A stretch of DNA of 64,000 nucleotides, from NCBI RefSeq assembly GCF_026571515.1, contig NW_026865143.1:1-64000 (forward strand), given 5' to 3'. The notes below the pieces were generated by a model. That model searched no databases, was not told the origin of the DNA, and saw nothing but the letters and a program-made list of their open reading frames with translations. The stretch comes from Ruditapes philippinarum (Eukaryota). Positions 1-8,826 of this stretch are shown one piece after another. The stretch's first letter is position 1; the number at the start of each line of letters is the position of its first letter. Both the position numbers and the translations under genes were made by a program.

Positions 1-646
1 GATTCCTGAGGCATGTTGTGCCTTTAAGAGCGGACACAAGTCGCTGCAAGAAAACCGATTTATCTCCCGTTCACCGTTGTCAGAAATTAAAGCAGCTATT
101 ACATCCCTCCGATGACTATGCCTTGTTTCACATTTAAGCCATTCGAGCGGGGGCGGCAGTCTCTTTAGTCGTGTTTTTGACTCAGTTAATAAATTAGGAC
201 GGTACAAATAAGAACATGACAAGAATAGCAGAATATGTGTTTACTTGGACAATATAATGCACACGCTAAATGGTCATATATCACTAACCGTGAGATTGTT
301 ACGCGGATAATCTCCCTTTTTTCTGTTTAGAAATGTACTGCTAACCGGAACACTGTTACACCGCGTAAAACATATATTTCACTAGTAGGATGGGGCGTAG
401 GGGGTGTATATACTGAACACTTTTTGTATAACCATTTACTTGGTTTTAAAAGGGGCATATTTTTCATGAAATAGTCCTCTTTGCGTTCTTAGCGTTCTTA
501 TTTATATTAAGTACAATAGACCTGCGTCTATTTTCGTCATCTCCATATAATCATATTCTAATATTTATTTCTCAAGTTTGGACCGGGGAAAGAAACGAGA
601 ACATTATGTTAAAAAAAACTCCATTTTAACTCAAAACTCAAAAACT

Positions 647-1802
647 CCAACTCCATTTTTTGGCCCTGTCATAACACTTGCTCCGTCTGAGCCAAACCCA
701 CACAGATTGTCTGTGCTTAAATGGCAGGAACTCAATTCTTGAACAATAACCTCAGTGATTGTTGCTGCATTAGCACTGTGAGAGTTCTCAAGCACATCTT
801 TGCAGTCCAGGAATTGAAAGTGTGAATCTCCCTGTGCATCAACATAGCCAACGTAAATCAGCAATTGTTCCATAGAAGAACAGTCGGTAACCTCGTCAAC
901 GAGTAGGCTAAACCACTTTGCTGTTTTAACATTTTCAACCAACTTAGTTTTAATCATTTGTCCAACAAGAAGCCTCATGTCTTTTTGACTACGTTCACTA
1001 GTGTTCTTAAAATGATTCATTGCCTCAACTCCAATCTGTTTCTGTAACTCAATCAGCGACAACAATTTTTTGTTAGATACTTCTTCCTTCCCTAACCAGT
1101 AACTTGCTAAAAAGGCATTAAATGTCACTAAGTCTTTGCTCTCTTTTGCTTCCCTGTGCATTGATACAAGGCATGAGTTACGCCGCTCAAGCTCACATAA
1201 GTAAGTACTATTATGACCCGTGGAGCGTTGATGATCCAAAATGGCACTATGTTTAAAGTTGTTTGATGGTGTGATATTGAATGTGTTCTGTTTATTGAAC
1301 TTATTGGATGTATTATGAGTCTTACACAGTAGACAGAACATGCCTTTTCCTTCGACATACACCAGCCACCAGATACCTGTATCATCACTGTAAGAAGTTT
1401 TTCTATCAGTGAGCCATGCATGGCGAAAAATATCACTTCCTTTTTTCTTTTTTTCTTGGCCAGTACACTTTGGTGCCTTTTCACTACGTATTCTTTTTAG
1501 CTCAATTTCAGAAAGTTCACTGCACACACCTGAACAGGTATAAAAACTATGGAGTTTGCAATCACTCAAAGAATCCTCAAAGTGTTCCTTCAATAGCTCA
1601 ACAGCTTCAGCTTTACTTAATTCATTTTTATTACTTATACAGATTTTCACAGGGTCAGAGGCATGTGATTCAGACTTGTTATTGTTTTTGTCAGTTTCTG
1701 AAATCTGAGCAAGTTGCTGATGTGGAACAAAATTTATCTTTTCAACCTGGGCAGGTGGTTCTACATTTTCCTGAGTATCATCACTGTGGCTTAGGTCAGA
1801 TT
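647..1802 (-). CDS. hAT transposase (ZNF862-like) exon 2, N-terminal part
   Basis: TTF-type zinc finger (WL...MFCLLC...H...H), FSLLVDEVTD (first catalytic D) and GFGSDGASVMTG (second catalytic D). Broken after PKNGVG. Confidence 0.9.
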
Positions 1803-2601
1803 CTAAAATGAACAAAGTTTTTTGTGCTATAATGCCATATTTGATACATTTATTAAAATTGTGAAATTGTTTGGTATGTGTTTAATTTGTTTTAATTTTT
1901 TTCTTTTGTTTTTGATTTTTGCACACCAGTATGAAGTTTACATCTTTTTTCCTTGCAAAACTGTGATATTAGCTCTCTACTGTGATATTGGTGATATAAC
2001 TATATTTATTCTTTTTGAATATATATTTTCTAATATTATAATTCTTTTAGTGATCTGTTATGACTTTGGATCTTTTACATGACTGTGATATTTTAATAAG
2101 ATTAATTCTATACATTATATATAGGGTCTATATCTTTTTGTGTTAATTCTAGCATATTATTTAATGTATTGAAAGGATTGTTCAAATATTTTAAAAATGA
2201 TCTAATACTTTATTTTGCAAAAATAAAAATTCTACAATATTATGAAAAAAAGGATGGCACTAAGTTTTGAAAGAAATATTTCATATTTTAATTTTTATAT
2301 TAAAGCCTATATATAGTTGTAGAGATCTACCTGTATTTTCCATACTATACTGTAGTCATGCATAGATTTTAAACAAGAAACCAACAGGCATAAAGATATT
2401 TTTATTCGTGAAATAGATATCAAATCATGTTCAAATCAATTAAAATTATATAGAAAAACGTAGTAACAATTTAAATTTCGCTCGTACCGAACATTCAATG
2501 ACGTAGCCTCGTAGGTCAAACTGACATTAAAAAATGTATTCAATTACGCTTTTACTTTGTCAACAAATGATGTAAACCTAGAAAAAAGGTCATCAAAGTA
2601 C

Positions 2602-2680
2602 CCTGTTCTTTTCTCCAAAGCGTATGAAGCGTTTGTTGTCCTCCGATTGTCTTTATTTTCTTCTTCGGAGGGCCTGACAT
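2602..2680 (-). CDS. hAT transposase exon 1 (MSGPPKKKIKTIGGQQTLHTLWRKEQ)
   Basis: ATG at 2680, basic PPKKK NLS-like motif, GT donor at 2601-2600. Phase 1 matches the AG acceptor at 1804-1803, in frame with ORF 631..1815. Confidence 0.75.
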
Positions 2681-3254
2681 TTTGACAGTTTTGACCTTAA
2701 TTCCCCCACCCGTTACGGCATGCGTATCCGTGACATACAATTTACGAAATATCATTGGATAACGTAAACTTACGGAAAGAGACGAGTCGTTTTCTGTTAC
2801 CGCATTGGTTCCGATTGTTAATCCCGAAACGAGACGGAAACAGTAAAAAAAATCTGATCAGTGCGCGCCAATATAATAGGACGATAAAATAGATGCGCTA
2901 ACCGTATGCGCATAACATGCTTGGGATTCCACATATTGTTTTTGTTTACGATTCGGCGAACCACCAGTAAAAAAAGAAAACTACGAAGGATATTTTTGGG
3001 GGATTTTTTATTTTATGGTTTGGCAAAAGTAGCCGGCGGTAGACTGTGCAGTAGTCGGCGATTTCGCCGACCGCCGGGGCTTATGGAGAGCACTGGTTGT
3101 ATCTATTATCAATGAAAATACTCTCGAGTCGAAAGAAAAATGGCCGCCATTTACAAATTCTAAGTTTCGGGGGCAGAGGAATTTTTTTTCAAGAATTATT
3201 TCTTTGAACAAAAAATACCCATTTCCTCAAAATACGCTATTATAAGTAGATTGT

Positions 3255-3349
3255 TTAGGAAATAGATATCAATTCTGAGTGCATTGTTGTAGAATAATGC
3301 ACGGTTTGAGTTAAAATGCGTAGTAATATAATCACGAAGGCCGATAGGC
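3255..3349 (+). repeat. truncated copy of the hairpin-containing element at 21224-22040
   Basis: Near-identical to 21224-21319 (ttaggaaatagatatcaattctgagtgcattg...gaaggccgataggcc). Confidence 0.75.
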
Positions 3350-3692
3350 CCACAGACACTTGTTTAGAAGCGAATATAAGGCATTTATAATGACATTACT
3401 CCACACTATATACTATAAATAACATTTACTATGACTACGTTCGCTGAACAATAGACAACAGTAACCAATAAATTGATGGTTACCGTTGTCTACTGTTCCT
3501 CGCACGTAGTCGTAGGAAACCAGGAGAGCGAAAAAGTACGATGTATGTTTTGTACTTTCGGTTTTGACAAAATGGCCGACCATCAACGGAATTTTGATTA
3601 TAACTATCAACATCGTTAGCCTTTAAATCGTTTGTATGCATTATTCATTTTTCATTATCATTTATTCAGGTATATATAATATAGTAGGTATA

Positions 3693-3934
3693 TATGAGCC
3701 GCGCCATGACAAAACCAACATAATGGGTTTGCGACCAGCATGGATCCAGACCAGCCTGCGCATCCGTGCAGTCTGATCAGGATCCATGTTGTTCGCTATC
3801 AGTTTCTCTACTTGTAATAGGGTTTGTAAGCGAACAGCATGGATCCTCATTAGACTGCGCGAATGCGCAGGCTGGTCTGGATCTATGCTGGTCGCAAACG
3901 CACTATGTTGGTTTTGTCATGGCGCGGCTCATAT
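3693..3934. mobile_element. MITE with long TIRs (copy 1)
   Basis: atgagccgcgccatgacaaaaccaacat... pairs with ...atgttggttttgtcatggcgcggctcat, with arms of about 100 bp. Second copy at 32897-33137. Confidence 0.85.
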
Positions 3935-4567
3935 AATATAGTAAGCATACAGTTGTCATTGCAACCATGTTTGTTTGTAAAAAAACACGAATTAATTGCA
4001 CAAATTAGGATAAGATCTAGCATCTATATTAAGACAAAAAATGAACGACGAATGACTTTTAGAAATGTGCATTTCCCGACTTTAAAGCAGCCAGCCATGC
4101 GTAGTGGCACATATTACCGTGAGGCAAATATTCATAGCTTTGCAGTGAACGTATTGCTTTGGCGATCGCACGCTCGAGCGTGTCCTAGTGAGCTTCTAAA
4201 TATCAGTACCGAAAATGAAGCGAAACTGTCCGTTATAGGAAAATTACCTAAGCAATTTCAATAGTGCATATTAGGGCCTAATAGGTATTCCTTTTGAACT
4301 TGGGCTTCCTCGCTTAAACTGTTTGATTTGCGAGTAACTCGCAGTGCAGCAAAGGACAGTTTAAATATCTTCCACATACAAAAGCTGGTTACCCTCAATA
4401 CTGGTTACCACCCGGCCCCCGCCCGTCACTAATTAAATTCATAATTGAAATGTAATATTGAAAATATATATTGAAAATATGTGTGCGGGGGAGGGTGTGT
4501 GTGGGGGAGGGGGTACAGAAATATCTGTGTATGCTACAAACGGTACGTAATTTAGGAGGAACTCCAA

Positions 4568-5924
4568 AAAAATGGAGTTGGGTCAAGGCTTCAGGCACTT
4601 GCTCCAAACATGCTTAGGTCCCACTGTATCAGCCATCGCCTAGCCTTAGCATGTGGTGATGCAAATGATGATGTGAAATACATTTCTCAAGTAGAACAAA
4701 TATTGTACCAGTTATGGAAATGGCTAGAATATCCCAAACGTTGTGCTGCCTTTGTCAAAGTGTGTAAAAGTCTACATAAAATCAACCTGGAAAGTAACCC
4801 CGAGAAGCAGGAGAAAATCAGGACAAAGCTTGCTGTTAGAATTCAGAAAGCCTGTAGAACAAGGTGGTTGTCAACTGGCCAAAGCATTGCAAGTGTTTGC
4901 AAGAACTATGTTGCTTTAATGATGACACTTAAAAGCTTCAGTGAATCTGATGCCACAGCACATGGCTTACTGAAACGCATGAACAATGCGAAATTTGTAG
5001 GTGTAATGTTACTTTTAAACTCAATATTGCCTCACCTTAATGCTCTCAGCAAGCTATTCCAGAAGGATCATACATGCTACACTTCAATAAAACCAGCTTT
5101 GTCATGTACCAAATCAGCTCTTCAAAACATCAGAGATAATTTCAATGTTGTTGATGAACTTGAGCAGCAAATAAAACCTGGTGGTGCCTATGCTGAACTC
5201 GAAATAGAACTATCCAGTATTGACCCAACAAGAAAGTTCCTATCTAATCTACAAATGAACTATGTACAAGCATTATCACACAGCATCGATCGTAGATTCA
5301 GTGAGGCATGTCCTGTTTTACAAGCATTTTCAATCTTTGACCCAACAACATTACCTGCAAAGGCTGATGCAACATTTGCTGAGCATGGCCAGCAAGAAAT
5401 TAAAATACTCTGCAATAAATTTAACATTCATCCTGAAGAAGCCTTTGCTGAGTGGCAGAATTTTAAATTTCACATGGAAGAGTGGAAAATACCCCAGGCT
5501 GTCATTAAAGGAGAAGATATCTCACCTGCACACTATGTCATGAAGAAGATTGTGAAGGAGCAAGCAGTGTTCAAGGTTGGATTTAGTAATATGGTTCAGT
5601 TGGCACAGATTTGCCTTACACAGCCGTTGTCAAATGCTGTTGTTGAGCGTGGGGCCAGTGCTGTGAAAAGAGTTAAGAGTCGGCTACGTAGCTCCATGAA
5701 AAATGACATGTTGTCTAGCTTGCTACATATTACACTGAACGGTCCATCCCAGAAATCTGACGAATGTCATTCACTGTTGATGGAAGCCACTCAAATTTGG
5801 CGAAAAACTCACATCAGAAATCTGCCACCACTGAAGACAATGCCTCCTGTGGGTGGTTCTGACCATACACAGAGCCTTCATCATGTAACTCCTGTGCTTA
5901 CAGTTGACTGTGGAGTGCAAGCAG
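4568..5924 (+). CDS. hAT transposase exon 2, C-terminal part
   Basis: Reads KNGVGSRLQALAPNMLRSHCISHRLALA (CxxH motif), then TRW, then the hATC dimerisation region SNAVVERGASAVKRVKSRLRS (catalytic E). GT donor at 5925. Confidence 0.9.
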
Positions 5925-6125
5925 GTATTAATTAATTTGCTTGATCTTTAATATGTAAAATAAGAGAATGGTATTAAATTAATGCATAGTAAAATAAATA
6001 ATATTTTAAATCTAAGCAGCCTGGTCTTATTTCAACTTTACTCAATTCCTGTATTTTTGATATTTTTATATAAAGTCAATATGCTGCTGTATGGAAACTT
6101 ATATTACATGTATTTCTTTTAACAG

Positions 6126-6283
6126 ACCTGCTACCACAACCCTCTCAAGACGTTGAATGCAATGTTGAGGTTGAGACACAGAAAGCTGTATCTGAAGCAG
6201 ATGACTATCAAAATGCCCTTCATGCATTAGCCATGGATGACTCAGATTCCGGCCTTGAATCAGGCTCTGATGATTGTTTTTAG
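6126..6283 (+). CDS. hAT transposase exon 3 (acidic tail, DLLPQP...SDDCF*)
   Basis: Acceptor tttcttttaacag at 6125. Phase 1 matches the 5925 donor. Open to TAG at 6281-6283. Confidence 0.7.
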
Positions 6284-7290
6284 TTGTTAACTATAAAATG
6301 TTCATTAAACTGAGTTAAAATTTGATTTTTCTGTTCAATTTCAGTGTCTGAGCAAACCTTCCCAATAAAAAAACCAGGTCAGACAGTACCTAAAAAATGT
6401 ACCAGAATGCACCAAAATGCACGATTTAGCATCTTTAAAAGCAAAATTTTCCGGGGGAGGCCCCCCGTACCCCCCCCAGCGGGAGGGGAAACCCCTCCCG
6501 CACTCTCCCCCTCCTCGCCGCTTCGCGGCTCGCGTATAATTGAAACAACTTTCACCGGTTACTTTTATTTGGCCACTGGCTACTTTAGTACTTATGGAGA
6601 GCACTGTACAACAGATTAAAATAAAATAAGATTATTACCTTTAAACATCGATCAAAAAAAACCTATCAATCACACAATGACAAACTGAAAGAGTTTACTG
6701 CACTTTTTTCCTTGACATGTCAAATTCAAAAGTAAACAATCTGGCACAAAATTAACATTTAGATACAAGTTCTCCAAGAAAATCGTCTGTTATTTTTCAA
6801 TACTGTATAATATGACGTACATCGATGATGTCATTTGCGAATACATTATGACGTCACTTCATTAAGTTGGTGCTTAAAACTATTCGAGCTATCTAATTTG
6901 TTTGTAATTGAAATAAAAATAATAAATATCCCATATTCATTGGAGACTTGTCAGGGTATGAGATAAAATGTTTATTCAAAGGCTGATAAAAATGAGAAAA
7001 TAAGCTATTGAAACAAGTCCGTTAAAATAGGCGGGGCTTAATTTTTTAATTATCATGCAAGTGTAATCGGCCAGTTACCATAGCAGTTGCATGATAAATT
7101 TATGAACACCACATATACGTACTGTGAAAAGTAGTGTAGACAATGAAAAAAAAGTATAAAATTTAACACAAATAAACCACGAGTATAACAGAGAATAAAT
7201 CGCAAATTCACAACACAACGATGTAAAATGATTGTTTTATCACAGCATTTATCACAGAATAAGTAGCCTAAATCATAATATTATCAGTTG

Positions 7291-8826
7291 ACAAGAGGGC
7301 CATGATGGCCATGAGGTCGCTCACCTGTATATAGCCCCCCCCCCCCCTCCACACACACACCCATAAGAAGATGTTTCATGCTAAACATCTAAGCTCTAGC
7401 TCATTGGGCTTTTTAAAAGAATATTTTTTTTAAGCTTTTACTATACACATATAGTTAAAAACAATGACACCCCTGGGGTGGGGCCAGTTTTGACCCCAGG
7501 GCTTTTATTTGAACAAACTTTGTAGACACTTACTAGAAGATGTTTCATGCTTAATATCTAAACTCTAGCTATTTGGGTTTTTCAAAGAAGATTTTAAGTT
7601 TTTGCTATACACATATAAGGAAAATCAATGACCCCCGGGGCGGGGCCAATTTTGACCCCAGGGCTTTTATTTGAACAAACTTGGTAGACACCTATTAGAG
7701 CATGTTTGATGTTAAATATCTTAGCTCTAGCTATTTGAGTTCTTTAAAAGAAGATTTTTTAAGTTTTTACTATATGCATATAGGGAAAATCAATGACCCC
7801 CTGGGGTGGGGCCAATTTTGACCCCAGGGCTTTTATTTGAACAAACTTGGTAGACACCCATAAGAAGATGTTTCATGCTAAACATCTAAGCTCTAGCTCA
7901 TTGGGCTTTTTAAAAGAAGATTTTTTTAAAGTTTTTACTATACACATATAGTTAAAAACAATGACACCCCTGGGGTGGGGCCAGTTTTGACCCCAGGGCT
8001 TTTATTTGAACAAACTTTGTAGACACTTACTAGAAGATGTTTCATGCTTAATATCTAAACTCTAGCTATTTGGGTTTTTCAAAGAAGATTTCAAGTTTTT
8101 GCTATACACATATAAGGAAATTCAATGACCCCCGGGGCGGGGCCAATTTTGACCCCAGGTCTTTAATTTGAACAAACTTTGTAGACACTCACTAGAAGAT
8201 GTTTCATGCTTAATATCTAAACACTAGCTATTTGGGTTTTTTCAAAGAAGATTTTTTAAGTTTTTGCTATACACATATAAGGAAAATCAATGACCCCCGG
8301 GGAAGGGCCAATTTTGACCCCAGGGCTTTTATTTGAACAAACTTGGTAGACACCCATTACAACATGTTTCATGCTAAATATCTTAGCTCTAGCTCTTTGA
8401 GTTCTTTAAAAGAAGATTTTTTAGGTTTATACTATATGCATATAGGGAAAATCAATGACCCCCTGGGGCGGGGCCAATTTTGACCCTAGGGCTTTTATTT
8501 GAACAAAGTTGGTAGACACTCACTAGAAGACGTTTCATGCCAAATATCTAAGCTCTAGCTCTTAGGGTTTTTTAAAATAAGATATTTAAAGTTTTTTCTT
8601 TCGGTTGCCATGGCAACCAGAGTTCTGCATGGAATTAAATTCTTTGAACAATTTTTAAAGGTGACCACCAAAGGAACATTCCTGTGAAGTTTGGATGAAA
8701 TTGGTCTAGTGGTTTATGAGATGTCATTTAAAGTAAAAGTTTACGGACGACGGACGGACGACGGACACCGGACGAAAAGCGATCACAAAAGCTCACCCTG
8801 TCACTTTGTGACAGGTGAGCTAAAAA
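7291..8826 (+). mobile_element. non-autonomous Helentron-type (HINE/pearl-like) element with an internal 162-168-bp tandem array
   Basis: Starts acaagagggcc, has about 7.5 monomers, a GGAC microsatellite at 8745-8768, and a 3' hairpin gctcaccctgtcac...gtgacaggtgagc followed by taaaaa. Confidence 0.8.

What the first reader, a model, noticed from the sequence alone, without database searches (positions are those of the whole stretch)
647..6606. Intact hAT transposase switched off by a 3.9-kb inversion between 15-bp inverted repeats
Seen: the N-terminal half (minus, to 647) and C-terminal half (plus, from 4567) point in opposite directions. Both carry the same 15-mer, as an inverted pair (CCAACTCCATTTTTT at 647-661 and AAAAAATGGAGTTGG at 4567-4581). 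Flipping the segment between them gives ...SVMTGPKNGVG-SRLQALAPNMLRSHCISH... with no base gained or lost. The result is a three-exon CDS of 79+2499+158 nt (911 aa) with all DDE residues, CxxH and TRW and no stops. The two TIRs are currently direct repeats (3080-3095, 6591-6606) and become properly inverted after the flip. Inference: a young autonomous element was inactivated by one microhomology-mediated inversion. Because both repeats survive, the event is in principle reversible, like an invertible on/off switch for a transposon. A misassembly is the main alternative.
Basis: partly seen in the sequence, partly recalled or inferred. Interest (0 to 1): 0.88.

Follow-up and report, generated by a model that had tools for sequence, protein, structure and literature searches.

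The report
Clam hAT transposon split by inversion
A young hAT "jumping gene" in the Manila clam genome has been cut in two by an ordinary one-off 3.9-kb inversion, and the 15-base inverted repeat at its ends is most likely a scar of the repair, not a reversible switch.

Summary
This includes the exact 15-mer inverted pair, the two open transposase halves on opposite strands sharing KNGVG, two identical 16-bp ends in direct orientation, and a 79+2499+158-nt exon model.

The genome is Ruditapes philippinarum; the window begins at the end of an 84,466-bp contig. Uninverted copies of the same element exist, and a homologous empty site has a single TACAAC. So a normal 4.5-kb hAT with a 6-bp target duplication inserted first and was inverted later.

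The second break lies in a 3.2-kb repeat (R). Four clean R copies carry 12 bp at that point and no 15-mer. The window has lost those 12 bp and gained fillers of 37 and 8 bp. Both fillers sit next to the 15-mers and contain a direct and an inverted copy of part of it.

The 15-bp pair is therefore best read as a breakpoint duplication with templated fillers, from a staggered break and error-prone end joining. It was probably not pre-existing microhomology. Nothing supports a reversible switch.

Reciprocal junctions make misassembly unlikely. This is ordinary biology and of low interest.

The parts
1..609 (.). Right-hand part of repeat R (a 3.2-kb unit that is tandem on contig C6950). Position 1 is also the end of contig C13630.
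   Evidence: 97-98% identical to C785 and C6950 copies; contig length is 84,466 bp and the window is C13630:1-64000.
610..646 (.). 37-bp filler at the left junction. It is absent from all intact R copies and holds an 11-nt direct copy of part of the 15-mer.
   Evidence: 6 of 2000 shuffled fillers reach an 11-nt match. The 25-nt core at 622-646 is unique in the 1.4-Gb genome.
647..661 (-). 15-mer copy 1: the last 15 nt of the N-terminal half of the transposase, encoding KNGVG.
647..1802 (-). N-terminal part of exon 2. It holds the zinc finger (zf-C17orf113), DUF4371, and the first two catalytic aspartates (LLVDEVTD, GSDGASV).
   Evidence: The frame is open; Pfam matches; alignment with intact homologues.
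1803..2601 (-). Putative intron 1, with GT at 2601-2600 and AG at 1804-1803 on the minus strand.
   Evidence: This is a model only; there is no RNA evidence.
2602..2680 (-). Putative 79-nt exon 1, MSGPPKKKIK..., which looks like a nuclear localisation signal.
   Evidence: It is the only ATG-to-GT candidate of 79 nt and is unverified.
3080..3095 (-). 5' terminal inverted repeat (CAGTGCTCTCCATAAG in element orientation), now pointing the wrong way.
   Evidence: It is identical to the end of the C292 copy.
3096..3101 (-). 5' copy of the 6-bp target site duplication (TACAAC when read in the pre-inversion orientation).
   Evidence: The homologous empty site on C785 has one TACAAC.
3102..4558 (.). 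Upstream flank carried along by the inversion. The stretch 3589-4558 is the left-hand part of repeat R.
   Evidence: C6950 97.8%; C785 99.3% over 4277-4558.
4559..4566 (.). 8-bp filler at the right junction. Seven of its bases are an inverted copy of TGGAGTT from the adjacent 15-mer, which creates a local palindrome.
4567..4581 (+). 15-mer copy 2: the first 15 nt of the C-terminal half (KNGVG).
4582..5924 (+). C-terminal part of exon 2. It holds the CxxH (HCISH), RW (CRTRWLS) and catalytic E (NAVVERGAS) motifs and the hAT dimerisation region.
   Evidence: The frame is open; Pfam PF05699 scores 21.0 bits against a cutoff of 21.4; a family profile matches Hermes at the RW and E motifs.
5925..6125 (+). 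Putative intron 2 (GT...AG).
6126..6283 (+). Exon 3, an acidic C-terminal tail ending at TAG. An AATAAA signal lies about 80 nt downstream.
   Evidence: It matches the tail of homologue P0001 at E 4e-5.
6591..6606 (+). 3' terminal inverted repeat.
6607..6612 (+). 3' copy of the TSD, TACAAC.

Best explanation
A young 4.5-kb hAT transposon (16-bp TIRs, 6-bp TSD, three-exon transposase gene) inserted normally in the Manila clam genome.

Later, two double-strand breaks occurred. One fell inside the transposase ORF, between the second catalytic aspartate and the CxxH motif. The other fell about 3.9 kb upstream, inside a copy of a 3.2-kb repeat (R). The segment between them was rejoined in reverse.

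The break in the ORF was staggered or was copied during repair, so the same 15 nt now sit at both ends of the inverted segment in inverted orientation. At the R break, 12 bp were lost. The joints were bridged by short stretches synthesised from the 15-mer region itself. The 8-bp filler looks like snap-back synthesis, and the 37-bp filler looks like stuttered copying. This is the kind of scar that polymerase-theta-type alternative end joining leaves.

The result is a fixed-geometry, one-off inversion. It splits the catalytic domain and points the two TIRs the same way, so this copy can neither encode a transposase nor be excised as a unit.

Shown: the anatomy, the ancestral states and the fillers. 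Inferred: the repair pathway and the order of events.
For: 1. **Uninverted relatives.** C292:2380-6868 is colinear with the two halves at 98.8-99.4% identity and carries the 15-mer once. C8362 and C10578 hold older copies.
2. **Normal insertion first.** After flipping, both ends are flanked by TACAAC. The C292 copy has CTATGA on both sides. Contig C785 is colinear with window 6607-32900 at 78-93% identity. It has the empty site with one TACAAC, and the two flanks lie in the pre-inversion arrangement.
3. **The 15-mer is native to the transposase.** It encodes the NGV motif, which is the only invariant stretch in an alignment of 21 sequences.
4. **The 15-mer is foreign to R.** Four clean R copies read GTTACCCATACG (one with a single change) exactly where the window is broken. 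The filler is unique in the genome.
5. **Position and content of the fillers.** Both fillers lie between the R end and the 15-mer. They contain an 11-nt direct and a 7-nt inverted copy of it; 6 of 2000 shuffled fillers reach an 11-nt match.
6. **Known precedents.** Inverted duplications at inversion breakpoints are explained by staggered breaks in Drosophila (PMC1885836). Snap-back and in-trans templated insertions are described for Pol theta and SD-MMEJ (PMC4912351 and PMC2943611; one search lists them by title and abstract, and the mechanisms are from my own knowledge).
7. **Not an artefact.** The two junctions are reciprocal: the same R position and the same ORF position are involved at both. 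A single chimeric read or a repeat collapse would not produce this.
Against:
- The left junction is only 647 bp from a contig end, in a 25x PacBio RSII/wtdbg2 assembly that has visibly noisy patches elsewhere.
- The uninverted allele of this very locus was not seen. The ancestral state of this R copy is inferred from paralogous or possibly allelic copies.
- A prior 60-bp low-complexity replacement in this R copy that happened to contain the 15-mer cannot be strictly excluded.
- The repair pathway is inferred from scar shape alone.
Confidence: 0.7

Rival explanations
1. One reading: this R copy already contained the 15-mer by chance, inside a low-complexity insert. The inversion arose by recombination or template switching between the two pre-existing inverted 15-mers. 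No base of the element was lost, so in principle a second exchange could restore it.
For: The pair is exact and statistically unexpected. Flipping between the repeats restores the ORF perfectly. The left flank is locally rich in AACTC(CA) motifs, so it could be a native low-complexity tract.
Against: Four clean R copies carry a different 12 bp there, with no 15-mer and no filler. The filler occurs nowhere else in 1.4 Gb. A 60-bp replacement in R holding a perfect copy of transposase coding sequence 4 kb away would itself be best explained by templated repair. A 15-bp repeat is also far below the length usually needed for homologous exchange in animals (own knowledge).
Confidence: 0.12
2. Assembly artefact: the real genome has an uninverted element, and the assembler or chimeric PacBio reads produced the flipped segment near the contig end.
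For: The left junction is 647 bp from the start of contig C13630. The assembly is wtdbg2 on 25x RSII reads. Other contigs show unpolished, error-rich stretches. RefSeq protein XP_060569569.1, annotated on this contig, carries the uninverted junction.
Against: Both junctions are reciprocal and each carries unique filler plus a copy of the 15-mer. An artefact would need two matching chimeras. The region is clean (97-99% to its relatives, ORFs open), and no alternative contig holds this locus uninverted.
Confidence: 0.08
3. Programmed or recurrent invertible switch: the segment flips back and forth between the 15-bp repeats, turning the transposase on and off.
For: Only the geometry (both repeats survive), plus a RefSeq protein model that implies transcripts with the intact junction exist somewhere.
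Against: The repeats appear to be products of the event. No recombinase or recombination-site logic is present. The intact-junction transcript is equally explained by other copies, such as C292, or by other individuals. No reads show both orientations, and this could not be tested.
Confidence: 0.02
4. Transposase-made break: the hAT enzyme itself cut a cryptic site inside its own gene, leaving a hairpin-type end that gave the palindromic right junction, as in aberrant or alternative transposition.
For: The right junction is a palindrome, AACTCCA-A7-TGGAGTT. hAT enzymes form hairpins on flanking DNA (own knowledge).
Against: Neither breakpoint is at a TIR. No TIR-like sequence is obvious at either break (read by eye only, not scanned). 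The palindrome has a 6-7-nt spacer, which fits snap-back synthesis better than hairpin opening. The duplication is 15 bp, not the family's 6 bp.
Confidence: 0.04

Closest known systems
Inversions flanked by inverted duplications, explained by the staggered-break model (Drosophila melanogaster group; Ranz et al. 2007, PMC1885836)
   Same: A sequence that was unique in the ancestor is found at both ends of the inverted segment in inverted orientation. The ancestral arrangement shows no repeat at the second breakpoint. The joints are made by non-homologous joining.
   Different: The duplication here is tiny (15 bp) and the inversion is 3.9 kb, against the larger duplications of genes or other non-repetitive sequence at chromosomal inversions in Drosophila. 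One break lies inside a transposase ORF. Both joints carry templated filler.
Polymerase-theta-mediated end joining / SD-MMEJ scars (PMC4912351, PMC2943611, PMC5068794)
   Same: The short insertions at the joint are direct or inverted copies of sequence within a few bases of the break. One fits a snap-back copy and one fits an in-trans copy, and a small deletion sits on the other side.
   Different: Here the scars are inferred from a natural rearrangement in a clam.
hAT superfamily transposons (Hermes, Ac, Buster; animal 'ZNF862-like' / DUF4371-containing transposases)
   Same: It has short TIRs beginning CAGTG and the motif order D, D, CxxH, RW, E. It has a C-terminal hAT dimerisation region, and a family profile matches Hermes at E 2e-6.
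   Different: The TSD is 6 bp, not the canonical 8 bp. The N-terminal zinc finger is of the C17orf113 type rather than BED. Pfam's hAT dimerisation model is missed by 0.4 bit on the C-terminal half alone.
Bacterial invertible DNA switches (fimS, Hin/Gin systems)
   Same: A segment bounded by short inverted repeats whose orientation decides whether a gene is intact.
   Different: There is no dedicated recombinase. The repeats were most likely created by the event, there is no evidence of both orientations, and the host is a eukaryote. The resemblance is geometric only.

Membership tests
hAT superfamily transposon | DDE catalytic triad with CxxH and RW motifs, in hAT order | tested here: met
   The two halves align colinearly with 19 homologues of 693-790 aa that span both halves. 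The nearly invariant D149, D219, H246/C247/H250, R327/W328 and E589 (P0001 numbering) are all present. The family profile aligns its RW and E motifs to those of Hermes 4d1q/2bw3 at E 2e-6.
hAT superfamily transposon | C-terminal hAT dimerisation domain (PF05699) | tested here: inconclusive
   The score is 21.0 bits against a gathering cutoff of 21.4, at E 3e-4, on the C-terminal half alone. Several homologues carry PF05699 in precomputed annotation, and the Hermes match covers this region.
hAT superfamily transposon | Short terminal inverted repeats starting YARNG | tested here: met
   The 16-bp ends are perfect and begin CAGTG. The C292 copy has identical ends in proper inverted orientation.
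hAT superfamily transposon | 8-bp target site duplication | tested here: not met
   The TSD is 6 bp in both copies with readable ends: TACAAC in the window and CTATGA on C292. The empty site on C785 has a single TACAAC. From memory, Repbase recognises hAT subgroups with 5- and 6-bp TSDs; I did not check this here.
Invertible DNA switch | Inverted repeats present before and independent of the inversion | tested here: not met
   Four clean copies of repeat R, including the colinear homologous locus on C785, lack the 15-mer and have 12 other bases instead.
Invertible DNA switch | Both orientations coexisting in a population of molecules | not testable with these tools
No second contig holds this locus. 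Metagenome scans for both junctions found nothing.
Invertible DNA switch | A site-specific recombinase acting on the repeats | not tested
   I did not look for one. The only enzyme encoded is the hAT transposase, which is split by the event and acts on the TIRs.
Staggered-break / end-joining inversion | Ancestrally single-copy sequence duplicated in inverted orientation at the two ends | tested here: met
   The 15-mer is single in the uninverted copy on C292 and absent from R. It is present at both ends here.
Staggered-break / end-joining inversion | Junctions with small deletions and templated or non-templated filler rather than clean homologous exchange | tested here: met
   The window has a 12-bp loss and fillers of 37 and 8 bp that contain copies of the adjacent 15-mer.

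The most novel reading that the evidence does not exclude
The inverted and uninverted forms of this locus coexist, and the surviving 15-bp inverted pair allows occasional re-inversion. The one copy of this hAT family with both ORF halves intact would then toggle between dead and autonomous states. On this reading, the junction-spanning residues in RefSeq XP_060569569.1 come from the 'on' form of this locus.
Probability: 0.02. Interest if true: 0.8.

Novelty: new member of a known kind. Interest (0 to 1): 0.2.

Why it matters
The inversion itself is ordinary structural variation. Its modest value is as an unusually readable natural example. Both ancestral sequences are available in the same genome, so the scar can be read base by base: a 15-bp duplication, a 12-bp loss, one filler that looks like a snap-back copy and one that looks stuttered. 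It documents end-joining-type inversion formation in a bivalve.

It also shows that a short inverted repeat at inversion ends should not be taken as the cause without checking the ancestral state.

For clam genomics, it marks a very young, low-copy hAT family with 6-bp TSDs. The only copy in this assembly with both ORF halves open has been disabled structurally rather than by point mutation. It also flags a RefSeq protein model whose last 23 residues are not encoded colinearly on its contig.

Tried and rejected
- **Context of P0077.** The contig length (84,466 bp) and an own-genome protein search served instead.
- **PDB with each half alone.** Direct searches found nothing. Only the family profile reached Hermes.
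- **Second contig for this locus.** Own-genome searches across the TIR/flank junctions and both inversion junctions found no second contig for this locus, inverted or not.
- **Metagenome scans.** Exact-match scans of JGI metagenome contigs for the right and left inversion junctions gave 0 hits.
- **Earlier scan notes.** Nothing was recorded near this place. One unrelated hAT note exists elsewhere in the genome, and it did not affect my reading.
- **Bacterial-type promoter/terminator scan** of 2500-3100. It found nothing and is irrelevant for a eukaryote.
- **C292 as the uninverted allele of this locus: rejected.** Its flanks and TSD differ.
- **Foldback artefact at the contig end: rejected.** Bases 1-609 are not an inverted copy of anything nearby. 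They are the missing partner of 3589-4558 within repeat R.
- **Joined or spliced CDS.** By instruction I neither built nor searched it. All pieces were handled by reference and apart.


Full report
**Where this is**

The window is bases 1-64000 of contig C13630 (84,466 bp) in a 1.408-Gb, 15,874-contig genome. A RefSeq protein of Ruditapes philippinarum (XP_060569569.1) is recorded on a contig of exactly that length and is identical to the N-terminal half found here.

The assembly statistics fit the Manila clam assembly of PMC9803972. That assembly came from a single male, with 25x PacBio RSII reads, wtdbg2, Hypo polishing and three rounds of purge_dups. It had 15,908 contigs and 1.409 Gb before 27 contaminant contigs were removed. 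So the left junction of the finding lies 647 bp from a contig end, in a purged, moderately accurate long-read assembly.

**Check of the observation**

Every sequence-level statement holds.
- The 15-mer and its reverse complement are exact at 647-661 and 4567-4581. They are the only matches in 64 kb (expected 0.04).
- The minus-strand frame runs open from 1802 to 647 and ends ...SVMTGPKNGVG.
- The plus-strand frame begins KNGVGSRLQALAPNMLRSHCISH and stays open to the donor at 5925.
- Exon 3 (6126-6283) encodes an acidic tail that matches the tail of an intact homologue.
- A 79-nt first exon with a KKKIK motif and a GT donor exists at 2680-2602.
- Phases, lengths (79+1156+1343+158) and GT-AG sites are consistent.
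- The 16-bp ends at 3080-3095 and 6591-6606 are identical direct repeats.

I handled every piece by reference.

**What the gene is**

- The N-half carries zf-C17orf113 and DUF4371. The C-half narrowly misses Pfam's hAT dimerisation cutoff, at 21.0 against 21.4 bits.
- Homologues of 600-790 aa at up to 62% identity are named 'zinc finger protein 862-like' in clams and cnidarians.
- In an alignment with 19 homologues that span both halves, the two halves fit end to end and overlap only at KNGV. They hold the nearly invariant D, D, HCxxH, RW and E positions.
- A profile of that alignment hits the Hermes transposase structures at E 2e-6, at the RW and catalytic-E motifs.
- The break falls between the second aspartate and the CxxH motif, so neither half can be catalytic alone.

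**Was it a normal element first?**

Yes.
- Contig C292 holds an uninverted copy (C292:2380-6868). It is 98.8-99.4% identical, differs by about 0.3% in substitutions, and has the 15-mer once and properly inverted TIRs. That copy has at least seven frameshifting indels, which may be real or may be consensus errors.
- Older copies lie on C8362 (87%) and C10578 (partial).
- Flipped back, the window's element is flanked by TACAAC on both sides. The C292 copy is flanked by CTATGA. So this family makes 6-bp duplications, not the canonical 8 bp.
- Contig C785 is colinear, in reverse, with window 6607-32900. Identity is 78-93% and the differences are mostly substitutions. It is therefore either a very divergent unpurged haplotig or a segmental duplicate.
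- C785 carries the empty site with one TACAAC. The two flanks, which are now 3.5 kb apart and mutually inverted in the window, lie side by side there.

**The second breakpoint and the origin of the 15-mer pair**

Window 1-609 and window 3589-4558 are the two halves of one repeat, R. R is tandem with a 3.18-kb period on C6950 and is also present on C785 and C11223. In four clean copies the halves are joined by GTTACCCATACG, with one change in one copy. No copy has the 15-mer.

In the window those 12 bp are gone. Between the R end and the 15-mer there are 37 extra bases on the left (610-646) and 8 on the right (4559-4566). The core of the left filler occurs nowhere else in the genome.

The left filler contains an 11-nt direct copy of part of the 15-mer; 6 of 2000 shuffled fillers do as well. 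Seven of the eight bases of the right filler are the reverse complement of the adjacent TGGAGTT, which gives a local palindrome.

The 15-mer encodes the most conserved motif of the protein family (NGV). It is therefore native to the transposase and foreign to R.

The simplest reading is two breaks rejoined in reverse. The ORF break was staggered and filled in, or was copied during repair, which duplicated 15 nt. The R break lost 12 bp. Both joints were bridged by synthesis templated on the 15-mer region.

This is the inverted-duplication signature for which Ranz et al. proposed staggered breaks, rather than exchange between repeats (PMC1885836). It is combined with the snap-back and in-trans templated insertions described for Pol theta and SD-MMEJ. 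Those papers (PMC4912351, PMC2943611) were listed, and the mechanistic details are from my own knowledge. The pathway is an inference from scar shape.

**Real or misassembled?**

No other contig holds this locus in either orientation. Two metagenome scans for the junctions were blank.

The argument for reality is structural. The two junctions are reciprocal, involving the same position in R and the same position in the ORF. Each has its own unique filler and a copy of the 15-mer, and the local sequence is clean. A chimeric read or a repeat collapse would not create a matched pair of this kind. I put misassembly at about 8%.

**A loose end that bears on expression**

Residues 1-232 of XP_060569569.1 ('partial') are encoded on the minus strand at 1341-646. 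Its last 23 residues (SRLQ...RLALA) are encoded only on the plus strand at 4582-4650. A gene model cannot cross strands.

The tail was therefore probably taken from transcript evidence. This is my inference from how NCBI models add bases not found in the assembly; I did not check it. If so, mRNAs with the intact junction exist. They could come from another copy or from individuals that lack the inversion.

Two further near-identical proteins from other datasets also exist. P0078 crosses the junction uninverted. P0079 covers only the N-terminal part.

**Verdict**

The proposed cause (pre-existing 15-bp microhomology) and the headline (reversible switch) are not supported.

My odds are:
- by-product scar of a one-off end-joining inversion: 0.70
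- pre-existing microhomology: 0.12
- artefact: 0.08
- transposase-made break: 0.04
- true switch: 0.02
- other: the remainder

This is a new instance of known kinds of thing, and of low general interest.

Noticed in passing
window 646-1341 (-) and 4582-4650 (+): RefSeq XP_060569569.1 ('zinc finger MYM-type protein 6-like, partial'), recorded on this 84,466-bp contig, joins residues encoded on opposite strands. Its last 23 residues are probably transcript-derived and not colinear with the genome.
   Followed up: partly
contig C785:26942-67165 versus window 1-32900: A second contig is colinear with the window over more than 30 kb at only 78-93% identity, mostly through substitutions. It lacks both the hAT insertion and the inversion. 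It is either an unpurged, very divergent haplotig or a segmental duplication. The R part is 98-99% identical, much closer than the rest.
   Followed up: partly
window 1-609 and 3589-4558; C6950:5195-13142: Repeat R forms a tandem array with a 3.18-kb period on C6950. Contigs C13630 and C785 both end inside R, which probably explains the assembly breaks.
   Followed up: partly
window 3429-3590: A 162-bp element matches itself on both strands and has over 2000 candidate copies genome-wide at 93-99% identity. It is probably a very abundant MITE.
   Followed up: no
window 3691-3935: A near-perfect palindrome (107-nt arms, 93% complementary, 31-nt spacer) lies inside repeat R.
   Followed up: no
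window 7357-8000: Tandem repeats of about 162-166 bp (three or more copies, 66-98% identical) lie just downstream of the element.
   Followed up: no
L014 1770-1935 (C6950) and L016 around 5430-5500 (C8362): These stretches have inflated homopolymers that look like unpolished long-read consensus. Frameshifts in low-coverage copies such as C292 may therefore be assembly errors rather than mutations.
   Followed up: no
own genome, e.g. C15112:73735-74505, C1129:10092-10832, C6137:58611-59330: The genome holds dozens of other ZNF862-like/hAT transposase frames, with 142 matches to the 255-aa query. Many lie in open frames of 600-800 aa at 25-40% identity, so this superfamily is diverse and possibly active in the clam.
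   Followed up: no
window 3096-3101 / 6607-6612; C292 flanks: This hAT family makes 6-bp rather than 8-bp target site duplications, as seen in two copies and one empty site.
   Followed up: yes
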